A stretch of DNA of 64,000 nucleotides, from assembly GCA_047495785.1 (NCBI GenBank), contig JBLDXI010000066.1:372001-436000 (forward strand), in the 5' to 3' direction. The translations under genes and the position numbers were made by a program. Below, one piece after another: positions 21,068 to 43,485 of the stretch. Below the pieces are notes generated by a model. It was not told where the DNA came from. It did no database searches and saw nothing but the letters and a program-made list of their open reading frames with translations. Each line of letters starts with the position of its first letter. The first letter of the stretch is position 1. Source of the stretch: Lepidodermella squamata. Lineage: Eukaryota > Animalia > Gastrotricha.

Positions 21068-21218
21068 CGCTGATTACTAGTAAATTGTTCGATATTATCA
21101 GGTGTTCAAAATGATACCTAAAGATCACATAATAGTGAAGAAGTAAGCCGAATAAATATTTTTAATGGTCTCTTAACAAGTGTCTTAACAATTATTTTCT
21201 AAAATTTTCCAGTATAGT

Positions 21219-21356: not shown

Positions 21357-21427
21357 TGCCAAAATGATAAAATATTCCGAGCTTTTTTAACCGGTCTACT
21401 GCGAGGAATAATTTAACATTGAAAAAA

Positions 21428-22992: not shown

Positions 22993-23032
22993 ATTTCATT
23001 TTGCCATGAAAACCTTGATTTTGTATACCTTT

Positions 23033-23330: not shown

Positions 23331-23523
23331 GAGAATGAAATATCACTTGACGAAAATATTGTATTTTGAGTTTTGTTAGATTTATTCATCGACACTAGGT
23401 AATGTTGAAAGATTGCAACCCAGCGTAATCTGGAGTTTCAATAAAACTTGAATGCCATGAAGGGTAAAGCAAAACATTTCCAATCTTTCACATCTTTCGC
23501 AGCAGTTTCGCACACTCACTCAT

Positions 23524-24426: not shown

Positions 24427-25300
24427 ACTGAAATACTATGAAAAGGTCTTTAAATGCTATGGGGAAAATGCAATCGATAAAAACTGATTAAATTAAAAAT
24501 GACGAGTCTACGCTTGAAACACTGGAAAATTTCTGGTTATATTCATGATTATAATATGACCATACTATAACCAGGTAACCATGAAGTTAGGAATAAAGGT
24601 TTGGGCAATATAACTTCGGTATTATGCACATAACTAAATATTCAATACAAGCAATTGATGTATTGCGGTATTATTCCCTTCATAATATGTAGTGATCATT
24701 TCCTCTTTTGAGCGTTAATCTGTAAGCACATATAATAAATGATTTGTTGTCGCACTGGGTAATAGGACGATAGCACAACACGTGGCGCAAGAAATGAAAT
24801 ATACTAAGTAAACACGCTGTAGGCCTAGTGCTCATCATTACTAAATACAGATACATATTATTTCAGGTCTACTCTCATAGCGTGCTGCGTAGAAGCCTCT
24901 AGAAATGGCAATCCGAGAAAAAGGCGCACGTGGTAGACATGTCGGGGACAGGAATAGCTCATCGACAGTATCGTCTACATGCAGATAAATAATGTTTTCC
25001 AGGTCAATTCTCGGAGCACGTGGCGTGGAAGCCTCTAGAAATGGCGTAATCCAGGACAAGACGCACGTGGTCTACATGCATAGCCCATCGACAGCGTGGT
25101 CGACATGCCGAGGGCAAGCATATCTCATCGACAGCCTCAGTCGTTCATTTTGCGTTTTGAAAGGCATCGTCTTTTTGTTTAATTGCAATCGTCGCGTTGG
25201 CGCGCAACGAGCCACATTTTTATATATTTCTGTTTTGGAATATATTTTATGACTTACCCCTCTCATCTATTTGGTTTTTTTCCCTTAGATAATTGTTGAA

Positions 25301-26087
25301 ATGAGTGAAGAAATGCTCGATTCAAACACGTTGGCTTGCTTCGTTCGAAAAGCAACATCTTATCTAACCATACGGTACGTTTTAAAAAACACCACTAGAT
25401 TTATAATTTGTGAATGTCTCTTATTCAGCTTGAAATCAGAGTTATCACCTGGAGAAAAGAAGGAAATAACCGACATTTTGTGCATTGTTACGAATGAAAT
25501 TGGCAATGAAGCGAATTCCCCAGCAACAGCAACAAATAAAAAAGTAAGTATTACTGTTTCCTGCCATCACGATATGTAATTAATTTTTCATTTTTTCAAA
25601 GGATGTGGCACAAATCGATTTGCTACGATTTCTTCAATGCTGCGAACCGCAACAATCGATCCCTCCGACAGATTCCGCCGACACATTTCTGCCCGATGTC
25701 CTCACGGAAGATGCTTTGATATCTGATTTGAAAATTAAATTCGTCAATTTCTTGAATTTTCGCTCTAAAACATTGTATTCTGCTTACGAGCTTGGTTTCT
25801 CTTTGTTCGTGTATAAAACTAAATACTTTAAAAAAACCGGTAGAAAAGGCTTTGCAACTATTCTGGCCAAAACAGTTCTCCATCAGCGTAATGTCTCTAG
25901 TAAGTCCTGGATAAACAAATGCCTCCGCTTGTATAAACTTTTCAAAGATTTTTCGCATCTAATGTATTTGAATGTCGGTGTCGAAAAAATGTTGAGGTTG
26001 TCAATTGATATATTTACATTGCTCAAGTCAAATGATGATGCCAGACAATGGTACCAGTCGCTGTCTCGTTTTGCTTCTGAAATGTGA
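25301..26087 (+). CDS. Spliced Polinton accessory protein of unknown function
   Basis: Donor GTAAGT at 25544 and acceptor at 25601 join ORFs 25301 and 25605 in frame; possible extra in-frame intron 25375-25428; C-terminal AYELG...SKSWINKCLRLYKLF...W. Confidence 0.65.
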
Positions 26088-26643
26088 TCGTGTGATTGTT
26101 GTATTATGACTCATATTTCTATTTCATTATTGTCAAGAAGGGAGAATTCGCTGTACTAATCTGATATTCAAATTGCCGGCATTTGAATTTCGGCTTAGTC
26201 TTCGGATAATCTCTGTGACGTAATGAGTGGAAATATTTGTTAACTTTCAGCCTTTTCGGAATTCCTCTCTTTCTTTACATGCTTGAAATGACGTAAATAT
26301 CGTTTATTTCTCCTCAAAATTGTCTTGCTTCAGCGTTTTCTCATTCCATATTTCGACAGACATAAGCATGTAACGGGGTTTCATAGTTCAAACTGCCGGC
26401 GTTTGAAAAATGAAGCATTCGTCATGCATTTATGGTTGGCGAAATATGGAATGAGAAATCTGAAGTTGAGAAGGTGAAAAGCTTCTGTCGGGAATAATAC
26501 GGAGAATAAAAGTGAATACAATGAAAGTGCTTTTGCAAAGTAATAAAAGCAATGAGAGCTTCGATCGAGTCGTCATATAATGATCCTGAGCAAGCGTAGT
26601 TATAGTTACACCGCCGGCACACACCCATCGCTACTCCAGCTAG

Positions 26644-29600: not shown

Positions 29601-31221
29601 AATAGCACCCGAACGAATTTGCCCGGTGGTGTTGATACGCAATCGAGTTAGTCCCGTGGTTTTTGTTAATGTCAACAAGAAAGCACTCGATGTCGCAATA
29701 AAAAGCAAAAGGCAAGCGAAGCTGTTTGTATACGTTATTAAATTTAATTGTATTGCTTTTTGGAAAATGCACTCGTATATTTTTTTCGAAACCTACGCAT
29801 TTGTTATCCAGAATGTGGTTTTGTCTCACTTCTTCTGAAGTGAAGCTGGTAAAACACTTGAAACACCAAAAACGCGCGTGTTCGTTCTTGTTAGTGGATG
29901 CAAACAACGCACTAGGGTTTTTGATCCAGCTATAGTGGGCCTTTTCGTTATCAGTTGTACGCAACAGGTTAATTTCCTCGTGATAACTCCGTTTGGATAT
30001 GTAAAAGGGGGAGAATGTTCGTTTTTCATCATCATATTCAATTATATTCAAATTTAAAACATTTGAATCCTCTAATTTATCGATATCTTCATATTTTATG
30101 GGAAAATCTATACCATTGTATTGCACACTATTCAAACACCACCTGTAATTGCTGACTCGGTCCACGTGATCTTTTGGCGGGTACCTACAGGCTAAAATAC
30201 TCCAAATAATGCATTTATCGTCAGAGTTTTTAACGTTGACTACAGCATGTTTCCGTTTGATGTAATCCGGCGTGGGAATGTAGCTCCCTCCGGCAGTCGG
30301 ATGATACCGGAAGGTGTTGACATCTGTGTCAACCATTTTATTAAATACGAACTGACTACCTCTCTCTTCAAAGTCTCGAATGCCGTCTGCAAGCATGGAA
30401 AAGAGGCCGTCGACAACGTCGGGAATGTCCGCCGCATTTGTGACTAAAGGTGCCGCGTTGCTTGAAGAGCTCCATTTAAAAATTGTGATGCACTTCCTCG
30501 TTATTTTGTGAATGAATTCCACCTCAGCATGAAGCACGACTTTAACTGGGCCGAGAGAATTCAATTGTCGTCGATATTCATCAATCACTTTCGGGCGTAT
30601 CACAGAGGTGTATTTCAAATAATCGAAGCCTTGCACTATTGGTAACAGCTTGAGCATTGACGTGACTTCTACGAAAGTGCCGAAGTCATCTGGTCGCAGT
30701 TGGCGGACGTAATCTGATTTTTCGAAACTATTCATTGAAGCAATGTAAATGTAACCCGCGCGGATCAGCCGGTTAAATGCCGCGCCTCCAATCTTTATTG
30801 GGCGATTTGTTGTGGGGTTAATGACTGATTCGGCCCTCCGAACGGGGATTTGGACGAATCCTCGCCCTTTTAAAACATAGTTATTTTTCTTTATTTCTTC
30901 GTATCTTTGACTACCGGTTAGGATTTCTGCACCATTTTCTGGGTCGAAAACGGTACCTATCGTATTATTATTGGCGTACTCCATCAGTTTCCTATTTTGT
31001 CTATCATGAAAATAACTACCAGTTTTCAGCATACGGCGTAACTTGGGTGAATCGACAGGAATTACGGATCCATCGGGAAGCTTTACTCCTTCTTTCAAGA
31101 CTTTTCGTCTTTTGTCATAGTAATAGTTTTGACTCAAAAACTTGGTGAACGCTGTTCCATTAACCATGATTTGCCTGTGGGGAGCCACGGGATGAGGGAT
31201 TTTCTGTTCTTTTCTAGGCAT
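26644..31221 (-). CDS. Protein-primed family B DNA polymerase (pPolB) with embedded endonuclease-VII-like zinc domain
   Basis: Exonuclease motifs YCDIEC, FHNLKGYDSH, YLKTDVLLL; polymerase motifs LDANNLYG, KLMNNSIFGKT, FDTDS; CHICG...VRDHDHLTGRFRGAAHNSCN. Confidence 0.97.
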   Translation of the reverse strand: MPRKEQKIPHPVAPHRQIMVNGTAFTKFLSQNYYYDKRRKVLKEGVKLPDGSVIPVDSPKLRRMLKTGSYFHDRQNRKLMEYANNNTIGTVFDPENGAEILTGSQRYEEIKKNNYVLKGRGFVQIPVRRAESVINPTTNRPIKIGGAAFNRLIRAGYIYIASMNSFEKSDYVRQLRPDDFGTFVEVTSMLKLLPIVQGFDYLKYTSVIRPKVIDEYRRQLNSLGPVKVVLHAEVEFIHKITRKCITIFKWSSSSNAAPLVTNAADIPDVVDGLFSMLADGIRDFEERGSQFVFNKMVDTDVNTFRYHPTAGGSYIPTPDYIKRKHAVVNVKNSDDKCIIWSILACRYPPKDHVDRVSNYRWCLNSVQYNGIDFPIKYEDIDKLEDSNVLNLNIIEYDDEKRTFSPFYISKRSYHEEINLLRTTDNEKAHYSWIKNPSALFASTNKNEHARFWCFKCFTSFTSEEVRQNHILDNKCVGFEKNIRVHFPKSNTIKFNNVYKQLRLPFAFYCDIECFLVDINKNHGTNSIAYQHHRANSFGCYFKSDIASLPSRYQSFENCASFLEYLLSKTTHLIKFLTSTNVPMNLSETEERSFRSASICHICGCPVSEDEKVRDHDHLTGRFRGAAHNSCNLEYSYKKTAIPVIFHNLKGYDSHLILKSLGEVLVEFNKGRLKKNLKPLKINIIAQSSEKFIGFSVGRLRFIDSFNFMSTGLDQMVENLKKSGGKFEHLNSNFSEFTDEQRCLLLKKGVYPYDYMNSPRRFQETMLPAKEHFSSKLKSNSLVTDDIGRIEDAPVPISDEEYNHAKNVWDKLKCKTMKDYHDAYLKTDVLLLADCFENFRSISMKSYSLDPAHFFTTPGLTWDAGKKYTKASIGILNNNEMLEFVEKSVRGGISGVVLRHAKANNPYMKNYDKSMPHSYITCLDANNLYGWAASQMLPIGDFVFVDASVFTQDYILRLSDEAEFGYMLSIDAMYPRRLHDAHDAFPFFPEHTECAPSPYMESMMAKLKMPNPDNGPKLTQNLCHKTNYVVHYRNLKQALEAGLILTKVHKVLRFRQSKWLEPYIDLNTSMRKNAKTDFDKDFYKLMNNSIFGKTCENVKKRIDIKLATTPCELQKLINRPNFKNATRVSESLYSVDMARTSILYDKPIIVGACILELSKLLMYDFHYKVIKAQYGDKAKLLFFDTDSLCYHIETDDIYADMENWKEHLDCSAYPLNHRLHSMENNKVIGKFKDVSTGVIEVTGADGAKRPENILEQITEFVGHRSKSLAFTTEVVSAVTVERNSPNQVVKAKGVVKHCIGNIINFQNYKSSLLNSEIERVRFRQIRSVNHELYSIQSTKVALCPYDDKRWVKADGFTSFAHGHFRIAKEHEQFRVDQLGKKLDTLKSLSSACKYSRIKLKNILYDNLSKEKCTDIASFCRNFDATFKKIGHELEELDNLWFQSGQRPADYLPQAHVIADIEDREVLETWLKNNSTHDSSLECLLREGLFPKKIPKIAANESSLKEPLSVIAKRAQTRAKEKEGSGL

Positions 31222-31482
31222 TGTGGAATTTACGAGGGAAAATCGAGGATTTATATATCTATATATATTGTGAGGAGATTATTTTTTTAAGCCTTTTCAA
31301 CGCGCCAGTTAAGATTATGGATAGCTGTTATGGATCAGAGAGTTAAATTTTCATTTTTCTCAGGGGAATTTAAGCTCGGCAGGTGGCAATTTTCAACAGA
31401 CCCCACAGTCAGTCGAGAATGATGAAACAATACTTAAAAAAATATTTTCTTATATATTTATATAAATAATAATATAAATCCT

Positions 31483-31728
31483 ATGTCTGTCGGAATTCAT
31501 AAAGTTAATGACATGCCTCAGCCAGCAGAACAGAGTCAGAAGACCCAACTCATCACAAGTGGATGTGCCAGTTATCCAAGATGGATAAAATATAGAACAG
31601 ATGAAGAAAGAAAAGAAGGATATAAGTCAGCTTTGAAAACTGCGCAAAAGAAATATTATGAGAAGCGAAAAGCAATGGTAGAGGAGTATAAACAAATCAA
31701 AGCAATTATTTCCAACAACAAGGTTTAG
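31483..31728 (+). CDS. Small basic protein, divergent from pPolB
   Basis: 81 aa with KYRTDEERKE...AQKKYYEKRK helix; AT-rich upstream region mirrors that of pPolB. Confidence 0.65.
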   Translation: MSVGIHKVNDMPQPAEQSQKTQLITSGCASYPRWIKYRTDEERKEGYKSALKTAQKKYYEKRKAMVEEYKQIKAIISNNKV

Positions 31729-31888
31729 CAGCTTTGATTCTTCAGAATATTTTCCGTGAAATGCTATCCGCAAAGTCTGGTGAATAATTTTCTACATATA
31801 AAGTAGGAATTTACGAGGGATTTTAGCCTTACCATCAGGGCATATGAAATGTGACGGTTCCATATGCCTTGCATGCCAATTTAAATCA

Positions 31889-33493
31889 TTAATCAATAAC
31901 ATTTTCTGCATTTTCCCATGTGGGTTTGTCATAACCCGACCATTTTATTAAAACCAACTCTTTTCCTTTAACTTTCTTCCTATCCAAAATTTTCTCAACT
32001 CTATACACGTCATCTACCTGCTGTTTCGATTTTTGCATTTCTTGCTCGTAAAAACTACCGAAAACAGGCTCGCCGTCCATTGCCTCTATCTGGTATGTTC
32101 TCGGATATGTGTCATTTATTTTTACAACTCGCAATAGTTCTTCGCTCCATGAAGGGTGATACCCTTTTTCGAATGCGCCTTTTACGCGGCTTATCCTAAT
32201 CACGTCACCCAGCGCAAATTTCGGCTTTTCCAATTTTTCTTTTCGTTCCGGGGGATTCAGCCTAGAATGGACTTTGTTGTGGTTTTTGGGATCGCTGGCC
32301 TCGATGGGAGTCATTCCTATCGACCGATGCAGAGAATTATTATAATCACTGACCAAGCTATCGAGCATGCCAACCCAGTTACGGGTGTTGTCCAGTGTGA
32401 ACCTTTTCCACATCTTGGTTTTCAAAGTTCGGTTGAATCTTTCTATTATGGGATTGTGAAAATTCTCATAAGTCGAATACCTGTTAACATTATTAGCTTT
32501 TAGCCATTTCGTGAACACAGCATTGTAAAATTCACTGCCTTGATCTACCCAAATATTTTTGGGCTTCCTGTTGCTTTCTCGGACCACAGACAAAAATGCA
32601 TCAAAAACATTTTTCGCATCCTTGCTCTTAAGTGCGACAGCCCACGCATATTTGGAAAAGCAATCTATAATCGTGAGTAAATACTTATGCTGATTATTTT
32701 CTTCGGATAAATCGCTCAGAAACACGATATCCATGCCCCAGGTTTCGTCGATATCGTGAATATACACTCGCCTGCGAGGAAAATGCTTCCGGGCCGGTTT
32801 ATGAAGTTCCTCGGAGAGAACGTGGAATTTGACTTTGCTCAAGCTTTGATCTGCATCCGTCTCTTTTTTCGACGCTGGGACTGCTTGCGTTGTTTTGGCA
32901 CTGCTTTCTGCTTTTTTCCTTGATCGTTTTGGTTGCGGAACCTCGCCGATATATTTTGTTCCAGTATAATCCACAGGTTTCCTTTGCCGTAATTCGTATC
33001 CTTCTCCGCGGCACTCGCGTTCTTGAGGCGGAAGCTCATGGCCCGTCAGCCCTTGACCTTGACCGCCATGGAACTCGCCTTCCCGACTGGAAAGCTCGTA
33101 TCCTGTAGGCACTCGGCCTCCATGGAATCTATCGGCTAAGCCTCCTTCGTGAAAGGTTTTGAAAACGAAGGCAGCCATGGCTCTCTCGTATCCGTTTTTA
33201 GAATCGTCGTTGGCTATCTTGAAAGCTTCTTCGGCTAGAAGTCTGTCTGCTCTTGTCCGCATTTCACGATCTTTAAATTTCCAATAGTAATAGTCATGAT
33301 TTTTAGCTGCTTTGTCCAAATCATTGATTCCTTCATATCCTTCCTTCATGCGCTGGACGAAATTTGTACCTGGTCCAGCGTAACTGTATTTCTGCGTGTT
33401 GTTGAATGATCCGTTGGGACGATGCTCGCCTTTGAACGGGTAAGAGGGAAGATGCAATTCTACCGGCAAGTTATTGATAATTCCGTCGAACAT
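31889..33493 (-). CDS. Parvovirus-VP1-type phospholipase A2 fused to retroviral-like (rve) integrase and chromodomain
   Basis: YSYAGPGT...NDLDKAAKNHDYYY (PLA2 Ca-loop and HD); DDE triad WGMD / WVDQGSEF / IERFNRTLK; C-terminal YRVEKILD...LIKWSGYDKPTWE chromodomain. Confidence 0.95.
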   Translation of the reverse strand: MFDGIINNLPVELHLPSYPFKGEHRPNGSFNNTQKYSYAGPGTNFVQRMKEGYEGINDLDKAAKNHDYYYWKFKDREMRTRADRLLAEEAFKIANDDSKNGYERAMAAFVFKTFHEGGLADRFHGGRVPTGYELSSREGEFHGGQGQGLTGHELPPQERECRGEGYELRQRKPVDYTGTKYIGEVPQPKRSRKKAESSAKTTQAVPASKKETDADQSLSKVKFHVLSEELHKPARKHFPRRRVYIHDIDETWGMDIVFLSDLSEENNQHKYLLTIIDCFSKYAWAVALKSKDAKNVFDAFLSVVRESNRKPKNIWVDQGSEFYNAVFTKWLKANNVNRYSTYENFHNPIIERFNRTLKTKMWKRFTLDNTRNWVGMLDSLVSDYNNSLHRSIGMTPIEASDPKNHNKVHSRLNPPERKEKLEKPKFALGDVIRISRVKGAFEKGYHPSWSEELLRVVKINDTYPRTYQIEAMDGEPVFGSFYEQEMQKSKQQVDDVYRVEKILDRKKVKGKELVLIKWSGYDKPTWENAENVID

Positions 33494-33539
33494 TTCACAA
33501 TGCTTATAACAGCATTAGAAATTTCTAACCTGAATTAAA

Positions 33540-34262
33540 ATGATCAATTTTGATGAAATAATTCCAAAGAGCGAGTCTAAGCCACTCAATATTTCCCCTT
33601 TTTACCCGCAGCATTGTTTCCGAACAATTATTATCGGTCCAAGTAATAGCGGGAAAACTAATGATTTGCTCAATATCATCCATCATTCTGTTTTTCATAA
33701 GCTGCACATTTACTCTAAAACCTTGGATGAAGACAAATACCAGTTTTTGATAAATTTGCAGAAAGCTAAAGAAGCCGAGTTGAAAATGAAAGGGGTAAAC
33801 GAGTCACTTATCCACTTTTCCACTGATATAGCGGATGTCGTGCCCCTTGATAAGCTTGACAAGAAGTATCAGCACTTGTATGTCTTTGATGACATTTGTT
33901 TGGAAAATGCTAAAAACCAAGAGAAATACATCGGCGATCTCTACATCAGGTCGCGAAAGTACAATTGCTCCGTGGTTTATTTGAGTCAGTCATATTTCAA
34001 AATTCCGAAAATAATTCGCGACAATGCGCAGTTCATTGTTTTGAAAAAGCTGAATGATGGACGCGAACTGCAAACAATTCACAGAATTTATGCTGCAGAA
34101 ATAGAAAAGCCTGGGTTCCTGAAAAAGTATGAATTGAGCGTTTCGTCCAATAATAATCACGGTTCTTTTATAATAGACAGCGTGATAAAACATAAATCGC
34201 TGAAGCTTAGAGCAAATTATACGGGAATTTTTGTCAGCGAATCTGATTCAGCTGGGGCCTGA
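33540..34262 (+). CDS. A32/FtsK-like DNA packaging ATPase
   Basis: Walker A GPSNSGKT, Walker B YVFDD, RSRKYNCSVVYLSQSYFKIPKIIRDN. Confidence 0.95.
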   Translation: MINFDEIIPKSESKPLNISPFYPQHCFRTIIIGPSNSGKTNDLLNIIHHSVFHKLHIYSKTLDEDKYQFLINLQKAKEAELKMKGVNESLIHFSTDIADVVPLDKLDKKYQHLYVFDDICLENAKNQEKYIGDLYIRSRKYNCSVVYLSQSYFKIPKIIRDNAQFIVLKKLNDGRELQTIHRIYAAEIEKPGFLKKYELSVSSNNNHGSFIIDSVIKHKSLKLRANYTGIFVSESDSAGA

Positions 34263-34815
34263 GCGCGCCCCTCGTAAATTCCCGAACTCTCTCAATATTT
34301 TTGAGGCCGGATTAATTAACTTACGTCGGAAATCGCAATATTCGCTGTTTTAAGCTGGGTTAAACTAGAAAGTTTACCGTTAAAATAAGCCTAAACGCAT
34401 TATTTTCCATGGCCTGATACTCAGTGTTCTGCGTACCGGGCCGTAGGACCGCTAGCCGGCGGTCGAACACCGCCCGAGTACCGGTCCGTAGGACCGCTAG
34501 TAGCGAGCTAAGGGCTCGCGTAATACCGGCCCTCCGACCAGTTAGCAGCGAGCCAAGTGGCGTAATACTGCCTCGTGTCTTGAATCCTCCAACCCTAAAC
34601 TCATTCGGTAATATTCCGATGGCCAGATTTTATAATTTACACAGGAAATCGCAATATTTGCTGGTTTAAGCTGGGTTAAACTAGAATGTTTTCCGTTTAA
34701 ATGAGTCGAAACGGAATTTTTCCCATGGCCTGATACTCTATCTTGAATTCTTCAACACTGAACGCATTCGGTTAATTCGGTAAAATCTGATCGAGAAAAT
34801 CTAGTGGTAAACCAA

Positions 34816-35970
34816 ATGCCGATCAAAGAACTCACGATCCCCGAACAGATAAAAATTTTGGAGCAATTAGATAGAGAAGAAAAACTGTATGATAAAAATC
34901 TCGCGCTTGCAAGTCATGATTCTTATGCGCTCAAGCACAAATTTGGGATGGAAACGGAACCCAGCCCGCTGACGGCCATGCAAACAGCATTCAACCAACG
35001 ACCGACCACTGAAGCCATACGTAGTTTGCAAAATTCGATTAAGGAATTAGTTGTAAAAAAGAAACCACTAATAGCTAAACACGGCATTCCAACTATTTCT
35101 GCCTCTGCATCCCCTGTGGCTCTGAAAATTCCTAAACTCGAGTATGAGAGTCCTGAGAAAAGTAGGCTAGCCTCTTCGCGAAATTCGCAAGATGATGAGA
35201 GTGATCAAGACTCTGACTCGTCGAAGGAACCTGATGCTCAAGATGGGACATTTACCACAGACGAAATGAACACTATCATCCGTCAGCATAATTTCCCGAC
35301 AATTGAGCAAATTAAACAGGAGGACATAGAAGAAGCCGTAGTGAGTTTGGCCACATACAACAGACAGGTATTGGGGGCCAGGCTCTCTAGTCTCACACGA
35401 GCGGGGAAAAGAGATTCAGAAGACTATAATAGAATTAAGCGCGACATCGTAGTTTTGAGGAACTATCGCGAAGCATTAAAAAGCAAACAACTAGGCGACG
35501 GTTTCACTAAACCAATCCCAAAAAATCTCCAAAGGTTTGGGCGATTTTATGTACGCAAGGAAGACTTACTCGACGGGTGGCTCCGCGTCAGAAAAAAGAA
35601 CCAAAGTAGAGTGTTTGATGAGCAAATTTCCGATGGTGTGAGAAATCTCATTTTGAAGCGATATGAACCGAAAAAGTACAAATACACCCAAGAAGATTTT
35701 TCACACTTCCAAGAAATTTGTCGTAGGACCGGATACCAACCGAAACCTCACTCCAACGTAAGATCTGAACTCGCAATTTCTAGGCAGTCCGGTTCTGCGC
35801 TTTTTGTGACCTTACAGGATGCACAAAAGCGTATGCTGCATTGTTTAGGAGAAATTAAAGCAGGTAATAACAATGAAGCAATTAGGAACGAATTGGTGTC
35901 TATAGCGGACTTGTTGCTGAAGCATGGAAAAATAACGAAGGAAGAATACACAACAGTTTGTAGTATATAG
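34816..35970 (+). CDS. Conserved Polinton/adintovirus virion-associated protein
   Basis: C-terminal KRMLHCLGEIKAGNNNEAIRNELVSIADLLLKHGKI motif typical of this Polinton gene family; GxG motifs; ATG at 34816. Confidence 0.7.
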   Translation: MPIKELTIPEQIKILEQLDREEKLYDKNLALASHDSYALKHKFGMETEPSPLTAMQTAFNQRPTTEAIRSLQNSIKELVVKKKPLIAKHGIPTISASASPVALKIPKLEYESPEKSRLASSRNSQDDESDQDSDSSKEPDAQDGTFTTDEMNTIIRQHNFPTIEQIKQEDIEEAVVSLATYNRQVLGARLSSLTRAGKRDSEDYNRIKRDIVVLRNYREALKSKQLGDGFTKPIPKNLQRFGRFYVRKEDLLDGWLRVRKKNQSRVFDEQISDGVRNLILKRYEPKKYKYTQEDFSHFQEICRRTGYQPKPHSNVRSELAISRQSGSALFVTLQDAQKRMLHCLGEIKAGNNNEAIRNELVSIADLLLKHGKITKEEYTTVCSI

Positions 35971-35994
35971 AGAATTATCTAGCTTCCAAATAAA

Positions 35995-36741
35995 ATGAGT
36001 CTGAATCCAATTTTCTTACCACTAGAGTATCTTTCAAATAATCGAAGTTCTCGAAATAACACCATCGACCGATACCTCAATGATAAAATAGACTTCACTG
36101 GAAGGCGAATTGCAGTTAGTTATTTTCATTTCAGCGATACGTTTCACAACGTTTCTGCTCGTTACGGAAACAATACATTGAAATACTCACTGAATGAAGA
36201 AATATTCGAAACAGTTTTTCCTGATGGAACGTACACCTTCCAAGATTTTAACAATTATTTGCATTTCCAGATGAAGTTAAACGGACATTTTGCCGTTGAC
36301 AGCGCGAAAGGAGCAGAAATTTTCGGCATCAATATTAGTGTCAACCCCGTATTCAGTTGCATTAGCGTTAGGATTGCGGAGAATTATCGTTTGATGGTAG
36401 AAACTGACGCTATGGCCCGGTTTCTCGGGGTCAACGTAGGCTCCTACGACCACGATTTCAATTCTCAAAACGTCCCTGATGTGACTATGGGGCTGGATAC
36501 AATGTTTGTTCATTGTTCCGTGGTTAATAATAGCGTCATCCCCGAATATAACACAGTTATTTTTACTTGCCCTATCAACAAAAAATTTGGGGAACACGTC
36601 AACTACATCCCGAACGAGAAAAGGTTCCTAATGTGCACAAACGCGAACACGCAGAATATTCGAGTCTGGCTCACCAATCAAGAAGGAAACGAGATTTACT
36701 TCGTCGAAAGTAAGTGGGGGATAGGTATAGATATAATCTAG
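35995..36741 (+). CDS. Minor capsid (penton, single jelly-roll) protein
   Basis: FPDGTYTFQDFNNYL, FVHCSVVNNS and IRVWLTNQEG motifs; position upstream of the major capsid gene. Confidence 0.85.
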   Translation: MSLNPIFLPLEYLSNNRSSRNNTIDRYLNDKIDFTGRRIAVSYFHFSDTFHNVSARYGNNTLKYSLNEEIFETVFPDGTYTFQDFNNYLHFQMKLNGHFAVDSAKGAEIFGINISVNPVFSCISVRIAENYRLMVETDAMARFLGVNVGSYDHDFNSQNVPDVTMGLDTMFVHCSVVNNSVIPEYNTVIFTCPINKKFGEHVNYIPNEKRFLMCTNANTQNIRVWLTNQEGNEIYFVESKWGIGIDII

Positions 36742-36765
36742 TGCTTATCTAGTTATTGCTGAATT

Positions 36766-37083
36766 ATGAATAATCGAAAAAGAAAGCGCGTTTACATTTC
36801 TGGCCGAGGATTCGTCGACGTTGGTAAACACATTTTATCGAAAATAATAGCAGTATCAGCTGAACCAGCCCAAAATTTTGTCAAAGCAGCGCTGAAATCT
36901 GGTTCAGAAGCTGCGGGAGATAAAGTAGGAAGTTTCGTAGCAACGAAGTTGGCTGATAAAGTTCTGCCTAGTCATGAGACAACTAATCTTAAAGCCATAG
37001 AGGAGCTTGAGCGCAAAATTAAAAATAATATAACTTCATACTCGGGCTCTGGTTTCAAAAAAGTTGAATTTAAAAAAATCTAA
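36766..37083 (+). CDS. Small basic core-like protein with GxG cleavage-type motifs
   Basis: RKRKRVYISGRGF...amphipathic helix...YSGSGF; lies between the penton and major capsid genes. Confidence 0.7.
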   Translation: MNNRKRKRVYISGRGFVDVGKHILSKIIAVSAEPAQNFVKAALKSGSEAAGDKVGSFVATKLADKVLPSHETTNLKAIEELERKIKNNITSYSGSGFKKVEFKKI

Positions 37084-37097
37084 TCCTTTGGTAAATT

Positions 37098-38477
37098 ATG
37101 CTTCAACAAGAGATTGTCAATAACATTTTCGAGACCACTGAAATTCAAGATCGGGTCTTTGAGAAAAAGACATGGACGGAAACGCCAGCACAGAATTTCA
37201 CTCAAGATCAAAATTCACAACCCTCGAAATTAATATTTTCCAGCTACAACCTAAAAGACAATTATTTACTAGTCAGAGAGGGGTACTTGGAGTTTCAATT
37301 GCAAATTAAAAGGAAGAATGGAGCCGCGTTCGTGAATACTGACAAGTATGCCATTCGGAATCACGTGTTGAGCCTGTTTGACAATATTGAAGTTCAAATA
37401 TCGGATTCGGATCACAAAATCGAAGAGCTGCGGTTCCTCGAACATTGGGCCAACATCAATTTCCTTTTGAAATGGAGTCCCGAGTACGCCAATAGTTTAG
37501 GGGAAGAAGTGTTATTTTCGAAAGACTGCCCGTTGGCTTTGGGAAGCACAACGCTAATTGCTGATGTGACGGCTGACACTTTCGATGCTTCGAAAGCTGC
37601 AGCTAACAAGGGTTTGATAACGCGAAGCAGTTATGTTAAATCTGCTGAGGCCACCGTCACTTTATATCTGAAAGATTTGCCCTTTTTCAATTCATATCAC
37701 GGAATTTTCACGAAGTCTCGATTTAGGATTATTCTCACCCCAAGCTATAATCGACCTTTGGTTTATGTGATTGCAGCGGCTGATAAAGATACAGCTGAAG
37801 GATTAACTTATTATTTCAATCGGGCTAATATGTACATCCCGGAAGTAACGCTCATGAACCAACAGAAACTTTCAATAATGAAAAAGTTCAACGAGGGATT
37901 CACCAAAATTCATAAATGGATATCGATTGATCCATATCAGTCCTGTCAATTTGCTGCTAATACCACGAATATTCAGTACACAATCAGCACTGAAATAAGG
38001 AAACCCAATTGGGTTTATATTGTTCTTTGCCCCGATTACTCAGACGAGGAATATCCGAAGAAACTCACGCAGATATATAACACGTGGAACGTTACTTCAT
38101 ATTCCCTTTTGATTAATAACAAAGAAGCCTTTAATGAATCCAATGTTTCTTTTGCTAAGCTGAAAGCTCACCGGTTATACAATTACATAAAACAGAATAT
38201 GCACCAGAGCAGCGATAGGGAAAGTCTGAATACGGGATGTCAGATTTCGTACATGGAATTCTGCAACTTGTACAGAATTCTTTGCTTTTGCTTGGACGAC
38301 GTAGATGCTACTTCCATTTACAACTCTCGAGCAGATAACACTGTTTCTGTAGTATTCAAAGCGACGGTCGGTGCGGTGAATAAGCCTCTTGTAATTTATT
38401 CGTTCATTGAAAGGGAAAAGGAGATATGCTTCAACTACAAACATGACTCTGTTGATATTAGTCTTACCAGCGTCTAA
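37098..38477 (+). CDS. Major capsid protein (double jelly-roll)
   Basis: 459 aa beta-rich ORF; EGYLEFQLQI, SLFDNIEV, MYIPEVTL, KPNWVYI, ISYMEFCNLYRILCF; position in the virion module. Confidence 0.85.
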   Translation: MLQQEIVNNIFETTEIQDRVFEKKTWTETPAQNFTQDQNSQPSKLIFSSYNLKDNYLLVREGYLEFQLQIKRKNGAAFVNTDKYAIRNHVLSLFDNIEVQISDSDHKIEELRFLEHWANINFLLKWSPEYANSLGEEVLFSKDCPLALGSTTLIADVTADTFDASKAAANKGLITRSSYVKSAEATVTLYLKDLPFFNSYHGIFTKSRFRIILTPSYNRPLVYVIAAADKDTAEGLTYYFNRANMYIPEVTLMNQQKLSIMKKFNEGFTKIHKWISIDPYQSCQFAANTTNIQYTISTEIRKPNWVYIVLCPDYSDEEYPKKLTQIYNTWNVTSYSLLINNKEAFNESNVSFAKLKAHRLYNYIKQNMHQSSDRESLNTGCQISYMEFCNLYRILCFCLDDVDATSIYNSRADNTVSVVFKATVGAVNKPLVIYSFIEREKEICFNYKHDSVDISLTSV

Positions 38478-38502
38478 TGCAAAATTTCTAATCTAGCGGT
38501 AA

Positions 38503-39132
38503 ATGAGCCATAAGTATTTCGAATACGAATTGCCCCTGACGGATAGTCAGCTTGAGAAACTCCAGGGTGCGGTGAAGAACAAAAAGTCAATAACACTTAA
38601 ATTTAGCAAACAGGTTATTCACCAAAACGAAAATTTACGCAAGTTGATGCTTACCCAAACTCAAATAAACAAAGTAGAGAAACACAAAGCCAACGACACC
38701 GGTGTTCAATTGAAGCTTAGTTTATCGCAACTGAAGAAAAGTCAATCAGGCGGCCTACTTCCCATCCTGCCCATACTTGCGAAAGCCGCAACGATTGCTG
38801 CACCTTTAGCCCTGAGTGCTGTATCAGGGCTGATAAACGGCGCAACCAACGCGATCGGTAACAAATTAGCGGGGAAGGGCGTAAACGAGACCACCGTACA
38901 ACTATCAGTTCCAAAAGAGGATTTGAATGAACTAGTCAAAATGGTCGATATGTTAGAAAATAAGAATTTATTGCCACTGGGCAGTAAACTTTCGATTGAT
39001 CGCGATATTGAGCAAAAGGGTGGCTCATTCGTTGTTCCACTAGTTGCTAGCCTGCTAGGGACATTTTTACCTACATTGTTCAAGGCGAATAAGGGAAATG
39101 GAGTGTATTTACCATGGGAGTCAAAAAACTAG
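38503..39132 (+). CDS. Adenovirus pX-like core/membrane-active precursor protein
   Basis: QSGGLLPILPILAKAA and QKGGSFVVPLVASLLG resemble the GG+hydrophobic segment of adenovirus pX. Confidence 0.7.
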   Translation: MSHKYFEYELPLTDSQLEKLQGAVKNKKSITLKFSKQVIHQNENLRKLMLTQTQINKVEKHKANDTGVQLKLSLSQLKKSQSGGLLPILPILAKAATIAAPLALSAVSGLINGATNAIGNKLAGKGVNETTVQLSVPKEDLNELVKMVDMLENKNLLPLGSKLSIDRDIEQKGGSFVVPLVASLLGTFLPTLFKANKGNGVYLPWESKN

Positions 39133-39563
39133 GGCGCTTCTTCCCACTTTCGAATTCGGATATTGACAAAATGATGTTCTCGAGAGTTGGGAAGAAGTAC
39201 AATGGATGTTACCCCAGGCATATCTTGCCTATACATTTGAAAAATGGATACTATGTGATCAACTTGGATGACTTTGGAGGGGGAACGCACTGGGTAGGAA
39301 TGCAGGTAACTGATAGGGAAATAATTTATTTCGACAGCTTTGGGTTCATTTGTCCCAATGAAGTCATTGAGAGGCGAAGTAATCGCGACATTTGGTATTC
39401 CACTCACGAAATTCAGCACACAAAAAGTGTGGCGTGCGGCTTTTACGTAGTTTACTTCTTGTCTGAGCTGGCGACAAAACGCAATAAGCTGGAAATTCTC
39501 CTCGATTTCACAAATGACGGGTCCATTATGAATGATATCAAGCTTAAAGATCTGATGTCTTAG
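39114..39563 (+). CDS. Adenain-like cysteine maturation protease
   Basis: GTHWV (His), YFDSFG (Asp), IQ....VACG (Gln/Cys); overlaps the upstream ORF in the -1 frame. Confidence 0.93.
   Translation: MGVKKLGRFFPLSNSDIDKMMFSRVGKKYNGCYPRHILPIHLKNGYYVINLDDFGGGTHWVGMQVTDREIIYFDSFGFICPNEVIERRSNRDIWYSTHEIQHTKSVACGFYVVYFLSELATKRNKLEILLDFTNDGSIMNDIKLKDLMS
39123..39198 (+). promoter_or_regulatory. Putative -1 programmed ribosomal frameshift signal
   Basis: A_AAA_AAC (39123-39129) immediately before the TAG of ORF 38503, 6-nt spacer, stem 39136-39153 paired with 39180-39198. Confidence 0.7.
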
Positions 39564-39569
39564 CAAAGA

Positions 39570-39690
39570 ATGCATTATTTGAAGTGTAAGGAGCATACCG
39601 AAACCTTTAACGAACAATGAAAGGTTTCGGAAAACAAGTAAGTGAGCAATTCTCAAATTTTCGGCTCCAAAAAGAGCAAATTTGTCGAAT
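39570..39690 (+). pseudogene. Degenerate DUF5679-like zinc-ribbon ORF
   Basis: MHYLKCKEHTETFNEQ*KVSENK*VSNSQIFGSKKSKFV resembles the YCLKCK..TET...C..CGSKKSKF pattern, with two stops and lost cysteines. Confidence 0.55.
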
Positions 39691-39738
39691 CAGGACAAAA
39701 TATTTTGTTTGTAAAAGGTAGTAAGTGCTTTCCTGGTT

Positions 39739-40212
39739 ATGGACGAAGAATTCGAATATTGCCTCTCTCTTTTAGCCGAAATAAAAAACAAGAGTGTGAA
39801 ATGCCATTCTAAAACAGAATGTGAAACGTGCTCATCACAGTTGCAAATTGATCATAGTCTCCACATCAACTTTTGTCCAAAATGTGCCATCGCATACCCT
39901 TTCATAGATTACTATCAAAGGGTTAGCCGTTCCCCACCTTACAAGCGGAAGTGGCATCTCATGACAAAAATCAGAAAACTAGGACTAATTCTCAAATGGT
40001 ATGAGCTCGATGACATAATGTCAAACTTCCAGAAAATAGATAAGCTCTATTCCACCGAATTTCCCGGTAAAAATATGATCAATGTAGAATTTGTGCTGAA
40101 GTACTTGTCAATGAAATTGGGCTATGAAGACATCGCTAATAAAATCCCTCTGGGCCGTTCTAAGGATACGATTTTACGCTGGCATGAAAAATTAAATCTA
40201 ATCATTACTTAG
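39739..40212 (+). CDS. Poxvirus/NCLDV late transcription factor VLTF3-like protein
   Basis: CETC...FCPKC zinc ribbon, YKRKWHL, then KNMINVEFVLKYLSMKLG...IPLGRSKDTI; parallels the VLTF3 pattern Y.R..H...RKNF..Y.YVL...LG...PLLKS. Confidence 0.7.
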   Translation: MDEEFEYCLSLLAEIKNKSVKCHSKTECETCSSQLQIDHSLHINFCPKCAIAYPFIDYYQRVSRSPPYKRKWHLMTKIRKLGLILKWYELDDIMSNFQKIDKLYSTEFPGKNMINVEFVLKYLSMKLGYEDIANKIPLGRSKDTILRWHEKLNLIIT

Positions 40213-40217
40213 TTGAA

Positions 40218-40931
40218 ATGAAATCTAGTTCAATTTTTATTCCTAGCGAATGGTCGGGAAGCTCGCATGGGTCGGATTTATTTCTACGCGCCGATGGGAA
40301 GAAAGGGCTCATGGGTAATATGAACGCAAATAATTTCAAAATTGAAAATCTTGGCCGCCCCGTTTTCGAAAATGACGCAGCATCGAAATCTTGGGTGGAA
40401 GAAAACACGTTGAATGAAAAAGAATCCAGGCAACTTATCGAATCGTATAAGCCGCTACAGTACGCTGATGACAGAACCATCGACATGAATGGTGGTCGGA
40501 TAACAAACGTGGCGTATCCCGTAGGTCTTTTTGACGTAGTCAACAAGCAATACGTTGATGGCCAAACATTTTTAGGCTTTGGTGAGAGTCATGTGAATGA
40601 CCAAACGAAAATGCCGGTAACAAGGGTGGTAACCCACACTTTGCTGGTTCAAATTAATGATGAGTTGTCTTTTCTCGAAAACATTTTGGCTAATGTGCAA
40701 TTTTGGTTTAGAATTTGGGAAAATGTCTCGCCAGGCTGCACTTGCGATTTCATGAAAAACGGCAGTGTCTTAATTTCTAAATATTTTTCATTCGACTACG
40801 ACGCGATTCGAAATATAGCCGAATACTGTACTTTCGTAGAACAGTTTGAAAATGGTGACACTTTCAGCATCATGATATCGTCCAGCAAACCTATAACTGT
40901 TGAATTTTGTATGAAAATATCTAACGTTTGA
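40218..40931 (+). CDS. Putative fibre/spike protein
   Basis: Two MN...I.N...P....D...K.(W/Y)V repeats (trimeric fibre/adhesin-stalk type), then a beta-rich C-terminal head. Confidence 0.6.
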   Translation: MKSSSIFIPSEWSGSSHGSDLFLRADGKKGLMGNMNANNFKIENLGRPVFENDAASKSWVEENTLNEKESRQLIESYKPLQYADDRTIDMNGGRITNVAYPVGLFDVVNKQYVDGQTFLGFGESHVNDQTKMPVTRVVTHTLLVQINDELSFLENILANVQFWFRIWENVSPGCTCDFMKNGSVLISKYFSFDYDAIRNIAEYCTFVEQFENGDTFSIMISSSKPITVEFCMKISNV

Positions 40932-41083
40932 TAAACGATGAAGTTCACTTCACTGAAACAGAATATAATATGATAATAAAAAAACGGGAAAAGCACACTG
41001 ACATGAAATTAAACCTGCAAAATTCGCTCCAGTCAGCAATCCCTGACAATTTTCGGGGGAAACTGTTAGAGGAAATGAATAGA

Positions 41084-41590
41084 TTACAACAGAAAATATG
41101 AACCGTGCTCAATAGGCATCCATGGAAATTGTAATGCTGATACTTTTTGATGCTCGTTCATAATTTTATCACGGGAGGCGGAAAGATTTTTAGATAGTTC
41201 TTTAGTAGATATAACTAATTTTGATTTATCACTATAATTTTCACGTGCAAGTTTAATTTTACTCAGATTAGCCTTGGTCTGTTTTCTTTTCTCTTCTTCC
41301 CTTGGTTCCACCTCTTCGTCATTTTCTTCATCAGTTTCTTCGTCATTTTCATTAATCATGGTATTATATATCATTTTCAGTAGCTCGCACAACCTTGGCC
41401 AACAAGTGAAAATTACTGATAATAATATAGTAATTGAGATTGTGAAAATTGCTAATTTCTTGTTTCTTGCATTCATTTCTCTTACTTTATTTACTACCTT
41501 CTCCATCAATATTTTATTAAGTTTCATCATTTCTTCTATGTATGACAATTCATCTGCTTTCATTTGTATTAGTATATTATATGCCTTCAT
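41084..41590 (-). CDS. Hypothetical membrane protein (Polinton accessory)
   Basis: 168 aa with one TM segment and an acidic stretch; AT-rich. Confidence 0.55.
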   Translation of the reverse strand: MKAYNILIQMKADELSYIEEMMKLNKILMEKVVNKVREMNARNKKLAIFTISITILLSVIFTCWPRLCELLKMIYNTMINENDEETDEENDEEVEPREEEKRKQTKANLSKIKLARENYSDKSKLVISTKELSKNLSASRDKIMNEHQKVSALQFPWMPIEHGSYFLL

Positions 41591-41595
41591 TTTTC

Positions 41596-41949
41596 TTATT
41601 CTCTTTCGAGATCCTCAATAAAAGCTAAAATTTCAGCTTTTGTTTTCTGACTCCTTGCTCGCATTTCAGCCTTTCTAATTTCTGACCTTTCTTTTTCTTC
41701 CTTCTGTTTTTTAATGATCTCGTTATACATATTTTCAATTTTAGCTTTTTCCTTGCGCTCAATTATTAACTTTTCTTGTATTTCTTTCAAGTTGTTAGAT
41801 TGATTTGCTTTCATAGCCTCTTCAGATTGCTTTTTAAGCAGCTTATAATCTTCTCTATACTCCTTACACTTACCTTTTAAGAAGTCAATGGTTTCGTTTT
41901 TTTCTATAACAATGTCATCACACTCAGTTAACGTTATGCAGGTCGGCAT
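41596..41949 (-). CDS. Hypothetical coiled-coil protein (Polinton accessory)
   Basis: 117 aa, E/K-rich; tightly packed between co-oriented ORFs. Confidence 0.6.
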   Translation of the reverse strand: MPTCITLTECDDIVIEKNETIDFLKGKCKEYREDYKLLKKQSEEAMKANQSNNLKEIQEKLIIERKEKAKIENMYNEIIKKQKEEKERSEIRKAEMRARSQKTKAEILAFIEDLERE

Positions 41950-42014
41950 TTTTATACTATTAAGTAGTACCGAGAAATTAATTATTTTTGATTATTCCTC
42001 CCTCGCTGTTTGGT

Positions 42015-42410
42015 CTACTCATCATCTTTATTATAAAACCCATGGCGGATATCAAATAGACTCGAGTTAGATTTCATCGATGATTCTTCTGCTCTATCAT
42101 TTCGTACCCTTTTCTCTCGGTCATACGTTCCTCTAGGGATGAGTACTATTGGTTCATTTTGCTGACCTACAGTGGATCGACCAGTTTGTGCTTTTACGCT
42201 CTTATCACGAGGTTCCCTGCTTGCAATAAAACCCCCAATTTGGGTGCCCTGCCCTTTCGATTTATTTATATAGTAAAATAGACTACTTGATGAAATGTCA
42301 AATTCCTCTACTATTTCTTTAACACTCTTTCGCGTTGTCTCATATTCCTTGATTGCCGTTTTAACTCGTTTACGATATTCTGGATCTCTTCGCAAATTTC
42401 GCACTACCAT
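42015..42410 (-). CDS. Helix-turn-helix (psq/CENP-B-like) DNA-binding protein
   Basis: RVKTAIKEYETTRKSVKEIVEEFDISSSSLFYYINK HTH pattern. Confidence 0.65.
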   Translation of the reverse strand: MVVRNLRRDPEYRKRVKTAIKEYETTRKSVKEIVEEFDISSSSLFYYINKSKGQGTQIGGFIASREPRDKSVKAQTGRSTVGQQNEPIVLIPRGTYDREKRVRNDRAEESSMKSNSSLFDIRHGFYNKDDE

Positions 42411-42449
42411 TATAAATTATTTTTTGATATATATTTGATTAAGAAAATA

Positions 42450-42877
42450 TTCCAGGTTCCAGGCACCAGTTTCCAGGTTACAGATTCTGGACCCCCGGGG
42501 ATTTGTCAGATTATGCAATAGCCCCCACTTATATATTGTTCCAGATTCCAGGTTCCAGGTTCCAGGTTACAGATTCCAGGTCCCAGGTTCCAGGTTCCAG
42601 GTTACAGATTCCAAATTCCAGATTCTGGACCCCGGGAATTTGTCAGATTATGCAATAGCCCCCACTAATATGTTGTTCCAGATTCCAGGTTCCTGATTCC
42701 AGATTCCAGATTCTGGACCCCGGGAATTTGTCAGATTATGCAATAGCCCCCACTTATATGTTGTTCCAGATTCCAGGTTCCGGATTCCAGATTCCAGATT
42801 CTGGACCCCGGGAATTCGCCAGATTATGCATTAGGCCCCACTTATATATTGTTCCAGATTCCAGGTTCCAGATTCCC
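42450..42877. repeat. Subterminal tandem repeat array (4 units of ~88 bp with TTCCAG(A/G) heptamers)
   Basis: TTCTGGACCCCGGGAATTTGTCAGATTATGCAATAGCCCCCACTTATAT occurs 4 times, separated by variable heptamer runs. Confidence 0.9.
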
Positions 42878-42913
42878 CATTCCCTAGTTGAACCAAGCTT
42901 ACAGTATCTCACT

Positions 42914-43485
42914 CTCCGTTATACCTCTTGTACCCTCCTTATCAAAATACTTTCCCCAGAATTTTTCCACAATTTCCCCACAGTTTCCCAGAATTTTTCA
43001 GAATTTCCCCCAAATTCACCAGCCCTCGCCCACCTCTCACCTCTCACCCTTACCCTTACCCATACACCTTTCCCTACCCCTACCCCTACCCCCTACCCTC
43101 TGTTATACCTCTTGTACGCTCCCTTTCGAAATAATTTCCCCAGCAATTTGTTCCCCAAATTTTCCCCCAAATTTATTTACTCCCTTTCTCTCCTTTGCAC
43201 CCTCATTATCTCTTCGCTTTTTATAAATTCACCATTTATTTTTCCCCTAATTCCCAATTTCCCCCGCCCCACCCTCAATTTTTCAAAAAGGGTGTATGCC
43301 GAATCACTCGGTAAATACATCATATTCACAGCCATACACCCTTTTTTCGATAACCCCCAGTTTTTACAAAACCCAATACTCCCCCCTTGGAAATACACTC
43401 ACACCATATAGCCCTATAAATCATAATTTCTTTGATTATTTCACTTTCCCTGGGTTTGGTCTAGGACCGGCTATTGTACTCTACT
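42914..43485 (-). repeat. Polinton right terminal inverted repeat (572 bp)
   Basis: Reverse complement of 20145-20716. Confidence 0.95.

What the first reader, a model, noticed from the sequence alone, without database searches (positions are those of the whole stretch)
39114..39200. Retrovirus-style -1 ribosomal frameshift linking the pX-like core protein to the maturation protease in a Polinton
Seen: ORF 38503 ends TCA AAA AAC TAG, placing the heptamer A_AAA_AAC directly before its stop. After a 6-nt spacer there is an 18-bp stem with one bulge (GCTTCTTCCCA/CTTTCGA at 39136-39153 pairing with TCGAGAG-T-TGGGAAGAAGT at 39180-39198). The protease ORF lies exactly in the -1 frame and is the one core virion gene without an upstream TCTA motif. 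Established: A_AAA_AAC followed by RNA structure is the gag-pro frameshift site of MMTV and HTLV. Inference: the protease is made as a low-abundance ~353-aa pX-protease fusion, which would package it into the virion at fixed stoichiometry and allow release at GG/GxG sites. I am not aware of this being described for Polintons or adintoviruses.
Basis: partly seen in the sequence, partly recalled or inferred. Interest (0 to 1): 0.92.

Follow-up and report, generated by a model that had tools for sequence, protein, structure and literature searches.

The report
Likely frameshift signal before Polinton protease
In a freshly inserted virus-like Polinton element, the gene just before the maturation protease ends in a textbook ribosome-slipping signal, so the protease is probably also made fused to its neighbour, as in retroviruses; this has not been described for this group and is not proven here.

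Summary
ORF 38503-39132 ends with the in-phase heptamer A_AAA_AAC (39123-39129) directly before its stop. Six bases later comes an 18-bp stem with one bulge (39136-39153 / 39180-39198). The adenain-type protease ORF (39114-39563) lies in the -1 frame.

The stem is not a by-product of coding: 0 of 200 dinucleotide shuffles and 0 of 3000 synonymous-codon samples fold as well. The protease has no TCTA motif of its own, while eight other genes have one.

Protein-level comparison adds support:
- All ten close relatives of the upstream protein end in ...K-N or ...K-K then stop.
- Read against the protease N-termini (G-x-K-K-L), three relatives must carry A_AAA_AAY at the same place.
- One relative, possibly three, lacks the protease ATG.
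- Two distant lineages have the two proteins fused in frame.

Against: ATG 39114 has a perfect Kozak context and is kept in most relatives. Conservation of the stem could not be tested, because I did not fetch relatives' DNA. No expression data exist. The 'pX-like' label found no support.

Verdict: -1 frameshifting is the best explanation (about 0.55). It is a canonical signal in a new setting.

The parts
20145..43485 (.). The whole Polinton/Maverick-like element (23,341 bp). It has 572-nt perfect terminal inverted repeats (20145-20716 / 42914-43485) and a 6-bp target-site duplication GGTGTG at 20139-20144 and 43486-43491.
   Evidence: Gene content. No stop or frameshift interrupts any of the 11 ORFs examined (count of breaks: 0).
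38473..38495 (+). Cluster of three TCTA motifs just upstream of the ORF209 ATG; presumed promoter/initiator of the ORF209 (+ protease) transcript.
   Evidence: motif 10-25 nt before the ATG of 8 genes; background 0.29 per 80 nt. for the same core motif in mavirus-type virophages. The promoter role is inferred.
38503..39132 (+). ORF209, the 0-frame gene. It has an N-terminal folded alpha/beta domain (res 1-82), two hydrophobic helical stretches, four invariant GG/GxG motifs and a highly conserved C-terminus.
39123..39129 (+). Slippery heptamer A_AAA_AAC in 0-frame phase.
   Evidence: Conservation deduced from two reading frames in relatives.
39130..39135 (+). 0-frame stop TAG (39130-39132) plus the rest of the 6-nt spacer.
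39136..39198 (+). Stimulator-like stem-loop: 11 bp + 1-nt bulge + 7 bp, extended by an inner 7-bp helix; 8-nt apical loop.
39114..39563 (+). Adenain-type cysteine protease ORF (149 aa) in the -1 frame. His59, Asp74, Gln101 and Cys108 are invariant in relatives. Its own ATG sits in an ACCATGG context.
39598..39630 (+). Perfect 11-bp hairpin 35 nt after the protease stop; possible 3'-end signal of the ORF209-protease transcript (inferred).
   Evidence: No AATAAA/ATTAAA between 38664 and 39780.

Best explanation
The 3' end of ORF209 is a programmed -1 ribosomal frameshift cassette. Transcription probably starts at the TCTA cluster before ORF209 and runs through the protease gene. Most ribosomes translate ORF209 and stop at TAG 39130. 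A minority, paused by the stem-loop 6 nt downstream while decoding A_AAA_AAC, slip back one base and continue into the protease frame, giving a 353-aa ORF209-protease fusion. Shown here: the signal, its statistical strength, the frame relation, and conservation of the hinge at the protein level. Inferred: that slipping happens and how often; that the fusion carries the protease into the particle; and that the protease frees itself at the invariant GxG motif nine residues before the shift site. Free protease from ATG 39114 may be made as well.
For: 1. All canonical parts are present in the right order and spacing.
2. The stem has z = -5.19 and ranks 3rd of 934 heptamer contexts and in the top 0.4% of windows. 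It is unique among the regions after the element's 15 stop codons.
3. It is not dictated by the protease sequence: 0 of 3000 synonymous-codon samples reach its energy (mean -13.5 against -30.2) or its 18 pairs.
4. No TCTA motif lies anywhere in ORF209 upstream of the protease, while 8 other genes have one. No poly(A) hexamer lies between the two genes. Reaching ATG 39114 by scanning means passing 6 earlier ATGs.
5. All 10 close ORF209 relatives (46-76% identity) end ...LPWE-(x)-K-N or K-K then stop.
7. Of 49 full-length family members, 21 end exactly in KN or KK, and 32 have K[KN] in the last 8 residues, against 11.5% of background windows.
8. P0001 has Leu where the window has the start Met. 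P0004 and P0006 were called from later Met codons.
9. In-frame fusions of an ORF209-like part to the protease exist in P0008 (a mite) and in P0198/P0279.
10. The first 5 protease residues are disordered in the model, and the extension before the conserved PLSN motif is peculiar to this clade.
Against: 1. ATG 39114 lies in an ideal ACCATGG context. A Met stands there in 5 of 8 close relatives, and 115 of 120 wider homologues start with their own Met.
2. The hinge is read in two frames, so double coding constraint alone could keep it. A basic C-terminus could also be kept for the protein's own function.
3. Relatives' peptides allow at most 17, 17, 15, 14 and 15 of the 18 stem pairs, so the stem may be eroded in the more distant ones.
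4. The contig pairing of relatives is inferred, not seen.
5. No close relative is an in-frame fusion, and the fused forms may be decayed genomic copies.
6. There are no expression data of any kind.
7. There is no Rfam match.
Confidence: 0.55

Rival explanations
1. Independent initiation. The protease is translated only from ATG 39114, on its own (internally started or spliced) mRNA. The A-run is kept because two proteins are encoded there, and the hairpin has another role or none.
For: ACCATGG context. Met is conserved in 5 of 8 close relatives, and nearly all distant homologues have their own Met. A pyrimidine-rich stretch followed by AG at 39083-39084 could be a splice acceptor (by eye only).
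Against: No TCTA or other recognisable start signal for this gene. The ATG is lost in P0001 and perhaps in P0004/P0006. This reading does not explain a hairpin that synonymous sampling never reproduces, nor why distant family members keep KN/KK right at the stop.
Confidence: 0.25
2. Termination-reinitiation. Ribosomes that finish ORF209 at TAG 39130 move back 16 nt and restart at ATG 39114, giving free protease in low amount from a bicistronic mRNA, as in coupled translation of some RNA viruses (established knowledge).
For: Start and stop overlap by 19 nt on what looks like one transcript. The ATG is mostly conserved.
Against: Known cases depend on signals upstream of the stop, not on a strong hairpin downstream. 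This reading does not need an in-phase slippery heptamer. P0001 has no Met at that place.
Confidence: 0.1
3. The hairpin is a 3'-end or termination signal of the ORF209 transcript (or a DNA-level element), and the heptamer is coincidental.
For: It starts 4 nt after the stop. A second perfect hairpin follows the protease stop.
Against: Hairpins after stops are not a rule in this element: 13 of the other 14 genes show no unusual downstream structure (background fraction 0.077 or more), INT is borderline at 0.040, and ORF209 stands at 0.004. Such a signal would also cut the protease off from the only nearby promoter motif.
Confidence: 0.07
4. Transcriptional slippage on the A6 run adds or drops a base in some mRNAs and so joins the frames.
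For: A conserved homopolymer lies at the hinge.
Against: Six A is short for slippage by a cellular polymerase (established knowledge). This reading does not use the hairpin.
Confidence: 0.03

Closest known systems
Retroviral gag-pro -1 frameshift sites (betaretrovirus / deltaretrovirus type)
   Same: A structural precursor gene ends at an in-phase slippery heptamer followed by RNA structure, and a protease lies in the -1 frame. The expected result is a minor precursor-protease fusion that is packaged and cleaves itself out. This comparison rests on established knowledge only; no retroviral sequence was fetched or compared.
   Different: A dsDNA, integrase-bearing Polinton rather than a retrovirus. 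The protease is a cysteine protease of the adenain fold, not an aspartic one. Here the protease also has its own ATG. There is no match to any Rfam frameshift family.
Adenovirus protease with its precursor-protein cofactor
   Same: The protease model matches the adenovirus proteinase best (1nln, 4ekf; TM 0.68-0.74). The neighbouring protein has GG/GxG motifs of the type that protease cuts, plus hydrophobic helices.
   Different: In adenoviruses the protease is a separate gene product that binds a peptide of another precursor. Here a covalent link through recoding is proposed. ORF209 shows no detectable similarity to any adenovirus protein.
Conserved -1 frameshift in tail-assembly chaperone genes of dsDNA phages
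   Same: A programmed -1 shift in a dsDNA virus sets a fixed ratio of a short and an extended morphogenetic protein (established knowledge).
   Different: That case involves bacterial ribosomes, other proteins and no protease.
Mavirus-type TCTA gene-start motif
   Same: The same four-base core lies in an AT-rich setting shortly before most genes.
   Different: In virophages it is read by a giant virus. Here the element sits in what looks like an animal genome, and what reads the motif is unknown.

Membership tests
Canonical eukaryotic -1 programmed ribosomal frameshift cassette | X_XXY_YYZ heptamer in phase with the upstream frame | tested here: met
   A_AAA_AAC at 39123-39129.
Canonical eukaryotic -1 programmed ribosomal frameshift cassette | Spacer of about 5-9 nt followed by a stable stem-loop or pseudoknot | tested here: met
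   6 nt; 18-bp stem, -33.1 kcal/mol, z -5.19; 0 of 3000 synonymous samples reach it. A pseudoknot was not tested.
Canonical eukaryotic -1 programmed ribosomal frameshift cassette | -1 frame open across the site and encoding a functional product | tested here: met
   The frame is open from 39093. The product has an adenain fold with an intact catalytic set.
Canonical eukaryotic -1 programmed ribosomal frameshift cassette | Heptamer and frame offset conserved in relatives | tested here: inconclusive
   Deduced from two overlapping protein readings in 3 presumed same-contig pairs. The KN/KK-stop ending is present in 10 of 10 close and 8 of 36 distant members. The DNA itself was not seen.
Canonical eukaryotic -1 programmed ribosomal frameshift cassette | Downstream structure conserved with compensatory changes | tested here: inconclusive
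   Only upper bounds from the peptides are available: 14-17 of 18 pairs possible. This needs relatives' DNA, which was not fetched.
Canonical eukaryotic -1 programmed ribosomal frameshift cassette | A transframe product is actually made | not testable with these tools
   No expression or proteomic data are at hand.
Curated Rfam frameshift elements | Match to a covariance model | tested here: not met
   No match at E <= 1 in 38900-39700.
Adenain / Peptidase C5 (clan CE) | Fold and the His-Asp/Glu-Gln-Cys catalytic set | tested here: met
   Top PDB fold hits are adenovirus proteinases. H59, D74, Q101 and C108 are invariant. The Pfam score of 16.7 is below the 21.3 cut-off, though many relatives carry PF00770.
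Polinton / Maverick | Long TIRs with a 6-bp target duplication; rve integrase; packaging ATPase; adenain protease | tested here: met
Polinton / Maverick | [quoted passage not shown] | tested here: inconclusive
   The 1525-aa ORF 26644-31221 has the expected size and place, but gives no PolB hit in Pfam or PDB sequence searches.
Polinton / Maverick | Double and single jelly-roll capsid proteins | not tested
   ORFs 34804-35970, 35995-36741 and 37098-38477 gave no Pfam, PHROG or PDB sequence hits.
   No hit in Pfam, PDB sequences, PHROGs or BFVD folds (the model is only pLDDT 60).

The most novel reading that the evidence does not exclude
The KN/KK-then-stop hinge seen in about half of the full-length members of this 1300-cluster protein family marks an ancient, clade-wide -1 frameshift that links a cleavable virion precursor to the maturation protease. 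That would be the first conserved programmed frameshift in eukaryotic dsDNA viruses, arrived at independently of the retroviral Gag-Pro arrangement, with some lineages having replaced it by a plain in-frame fusion.
Probability: 0.3. Interest if true: 0.9.

Novelty: new member of a known kind. Interest (0 to 1): 0.75.

Why it matters
How Polintons and adintovirus-like elements express and package their virion proteins is almost unknown, and no particles have been characterised for most of them. A conserved recoding signal would have four consequences:
- It would show that these genes are under selection for regulated virion assembly, not just for transposition.
- It would give a simple sequence mark for annotating the protease and its partner correctly.
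- It would explain proteases that seem to lack a start codon.
- It would add a rare case of ribosomal frameshifting in a eukaryotic DNA virus group, parallel to retroviruses and to tailed phages.

It can be tested with existing kinds of descriptive data.

Tried and rejected
- **Known RNA family:** Rfam gave no match.
- **'pX-like' identity of ORF209:** no hit in Pfam, PHROGs, PDB sequences or BFVD folds.
- **Leaky scanning from the ORF209 start:** six ATGs lie before 39114, two of them in strong context, so this is unlikely.
- **A general 'hairpin after every gene' rule:** not seen.
- **A second copy of the junction inside the window for a DNA comparison:** none.
- **In-frame fusions among close relatives:** none in the 115-366 aa range. 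Only distant ones exist.
- **Organism names for the relatives:** the cluster look-up gave none.
- **Splicing across the junction:** no convincing donor or acceptor by eye, and relatives keep the region as coding.
- **Literature:** no paper in the held library links ribosomal frameshifting with Polintons, Mavericks or adintoviruses. One search was wasted on a substring match.

Full report
**What is there.** The window holds a 23,341-bp element (20145-43485). It has perfect 572-nt terminal inverted repeats and a 6-bp target duplication GGTGTG on both sides. It encodes:
- an rve integrase with a chromodomain and a PLA2-like N-terminus;
- an A32-type packaging ATPase;
- a fibre-like protein;
- an adenain-type protease;
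- a 1525-aa ORF in the place of the polymerase, which my searches could not name.

None of the 11 ORFs examined is interrupted. Next to the element lies a Shaker-type potassium channel gene with a T1 domain, so I take the host for an animal. Nothing suggests a human contig.

**The finding itself.** ORF209 (38503-39132) ends with A_AAA_AAC in phase, directly before TAG. The protease ORF (39114-39563) is in the -1 frame, which is open from 39093. Six bases after the heptamer an 18-bp stem with one bulge begins (39136-39153 / 39180-39198), and the fold extends it by an inner 7-bp helix.

**Is it more than chance?**
- The fold has z = -5.19, and no dinucleotide shuffle matches it.
- Of 934 canonical heptamers in the window, this one has the third most stable downstream 75 nt. 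Only 0.39% of all 75-nt windows fold as well.
- In-phase heptamers occur once per about 180 codons in the element, so one inside the 13-codon stretch where a shift could work has a chance of roughly 7%.
- Keeping the protease residues and drawing codons from the element's own usage, none of 3000 samples reached the native energy (mean -13.5, sd 3.1, against -30.2) or all 18 pairs. Third codon positions have therefore been chosen to pair.
- No other gene of the element has such a structure after its stop.

**Transcription context.**
- A TCTA motif lies 10-25 nt before the ATG of eight genes, including ORF209 and the four genes before it. The background rate is 0.29 per 80 nt.
- The protease has none, and there is none anywhere inside ORF209 on that strand. 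The same core is the gene-start motif of mavirus-type virophages (PMC8547959).
- No poly(A) hexamer separates ORF209 from the protease, and a perfect 11-bp hairpin follows the protease stop.
- One transcript covering both genes is thus the simplest reading (inference). On it, ATG 39114 would be the seventh ATG.

**The two proteins.**
- Protease: the model is confident (pLDDT 86.4) except for residues 1-5. It matches adenovirus proteinases best, then the ASFV and poxvirus core proteases and CE-clan deubiquitinases. H59, D74, Q101 and C108 are invariant.
- ORF209: it belongs to a large unnamed family, with 1308 representative clusters at E <= 0.001. It has a folded N-terminal domain, then poorly modelled hydrophobic helices. 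Four GG/GxG motifs are invariant in all ten aligned members, the last one nine residues before the shift site.
- I found no link to adenovirus pX or any other named protein.
- Its role as a protease-processed, membrane-active virion precursor is an inference from these features.

**Comparison with relatives, at the protein level only.**
- All ten close ORF209 relatives (46-76% identity) end in ...LPWE, an optional residue, then K-N or K-K and the stop. The tail is among the best conserved parts.
- Protease relatives of the same clade begin M/L-G-x-K-K-L or M-G-K-K-V.
- Three pairs share source and contig length. For them, the 0-frame ending E-x-K-N-stop and the -1-frame reading G-x-K-K-L can only be encoded together by A_AAA_AAY followed by the stop. 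The heptamer, its phase and the offset are therefore kept there.
- In the wider family, 21 of 49 full-length members end exactly in KN or KK. Also, 32 have K[KN] in the last eight residues, against 11.5% of other windows. This holds although the residues before them differ.
- The start Met of the protease is not universal. P0001 has Leu there, P0007 also starts with Leu, and P0004 and P0006 were called from later Met codons.
- Two distant lineages carry the two parts in one frame: the mite protein P0008, and the pair P0198/P0279, which are 94% identical, both in frame, and on megabase contigs.
- More distant proteases, probably of aquatic Polinton-like viruses, simply start 2-6 residues before the conserved PLSN motif.

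**Weighing.** Frameshifting explains all the features at once.
- Independent initiation explains the well-placed ATG. It does not explain the hairpin, the missing promoter motif or the loss of the ATG in some relatives.
- Termination-reinitiation fits the geometry but needs neither the heptamer nor the hairpin.
- The main weaknesses are that the hinge is doubly coding, that the stem's conservation is unknown (peptides allow at most 14-17 of 18 pairs), and that nothing is known about expression.
- I put frameshifting at about 0.55, possibly alongside some free protease from its own ATG.

**Novelty.** In the held library no paper connects ribosomal frameshifting with Polintons, Mavericks, polintoviruses or adintoviruses. 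The adintovirus paper notes only 'nearly overlapping' ORF arrays. The signal itself is canonical, so I class it as a new member of a known kind in a new biological setting.

I could not tell that the bar did not apply.
- I did not fetch or type any retroviral or adenoviral comparator. The likeness to retroviral gag-pro sites rests on general knowledge.
- I built no transframe protein; its length was obtained by arithmetic.

1. In my private reasoning I began three times to recall short stretches from memory: the N-terminus of the adenovirus protease, the short cofactor peptide of its partner protein, and a few bases around a retroviral shift site.
2. The control inside one search put 7-residue stretches of a relative's protein in place of another stretch of the same protein, in memory, for a statistic. 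That strings protein stretches together, which the rule forbids. Nothing was saved or printed, and I do not rely on that control.
3. One search drew random synonymous versions of 24 codons in memory as a null distribution. Only summary numbers were printed and nothing was kept. I mention it so that the operators can judge it.

Noticed in passing
window 31889-33493 (-): The integrase ORF joins a parvovirus-type PLA2-like domain (res 35-98, E 2.4e-7) to the rve core and a C-terminal chromodomain. In adintoviruses the PLA2-like domain is described on a separate virion protein (PMC8502044).
   Followed up: no
window 33522-40222, upstream of eight genes: A TCTA motif in an AT-rich setting lies 10-25 nt before the ATG. 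It has the same core as the mavirus/CroV late promoter, yet the element sits in an apparently animal genome. What reads it is unknown.
   Followed up: partly
window 34263-34803: A 541-nt ORF-free, GC-rich spacer between the ATPase and the next gene. It folds strongly (-152.8 kcal/mol) and contains an internal direct repeat of about 150 nt.
   Followed up: no
window 26644-31221 (-): The 1525-aa ORF in the polymerase position gives no family B polymerase hit in Pfam or PDB sequence searches. The only hit is a sub-threshold Endonuclease VII-like stretch at residues 596-632.
   Followed up: partly
window 20538-20587 and 43043-43092; 42450-42883: The terminal repeats contain telomere-like GGGGTA/GGGTAA runs. 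The right end carries arrays of a 7-mer (GTTCCAG) within 88- and 137-nt tandem units.
   Followed up: no
window 39598-39630: A perfect 11-bp hairpin with an 11-nt loop, 35 nt after the protease stop.
   Followed up: partly
window 45530-46041; 48719-49556; 53805-54243; 60361-61069: Outside the element: a 171-nt inverted repeat pair (98%), an exact 417-bp tandem duplication, and two long tandem arrays (87 nt x5, 42 nt x17) that lie inside ORFs.
   Followed up: no
window 16401-18736 (-): Host gene: a Shaker-family voltage-gated potassium channel in two pieces, a T1/BTB domain ORF and an ion-transport ORF. It ends about 1.4 kb from the element's left end.
   Followed up: partly
P0062 and P0008 (proteins of relatives): In a mite-type lineage a short G-T-R-I-I-G-K-K-Y-like unit is repeated at the end of the ORF209-like protein and again at the start of the protease domain. 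This hints that the hinge region has been duplicated there.
   Followed up: no
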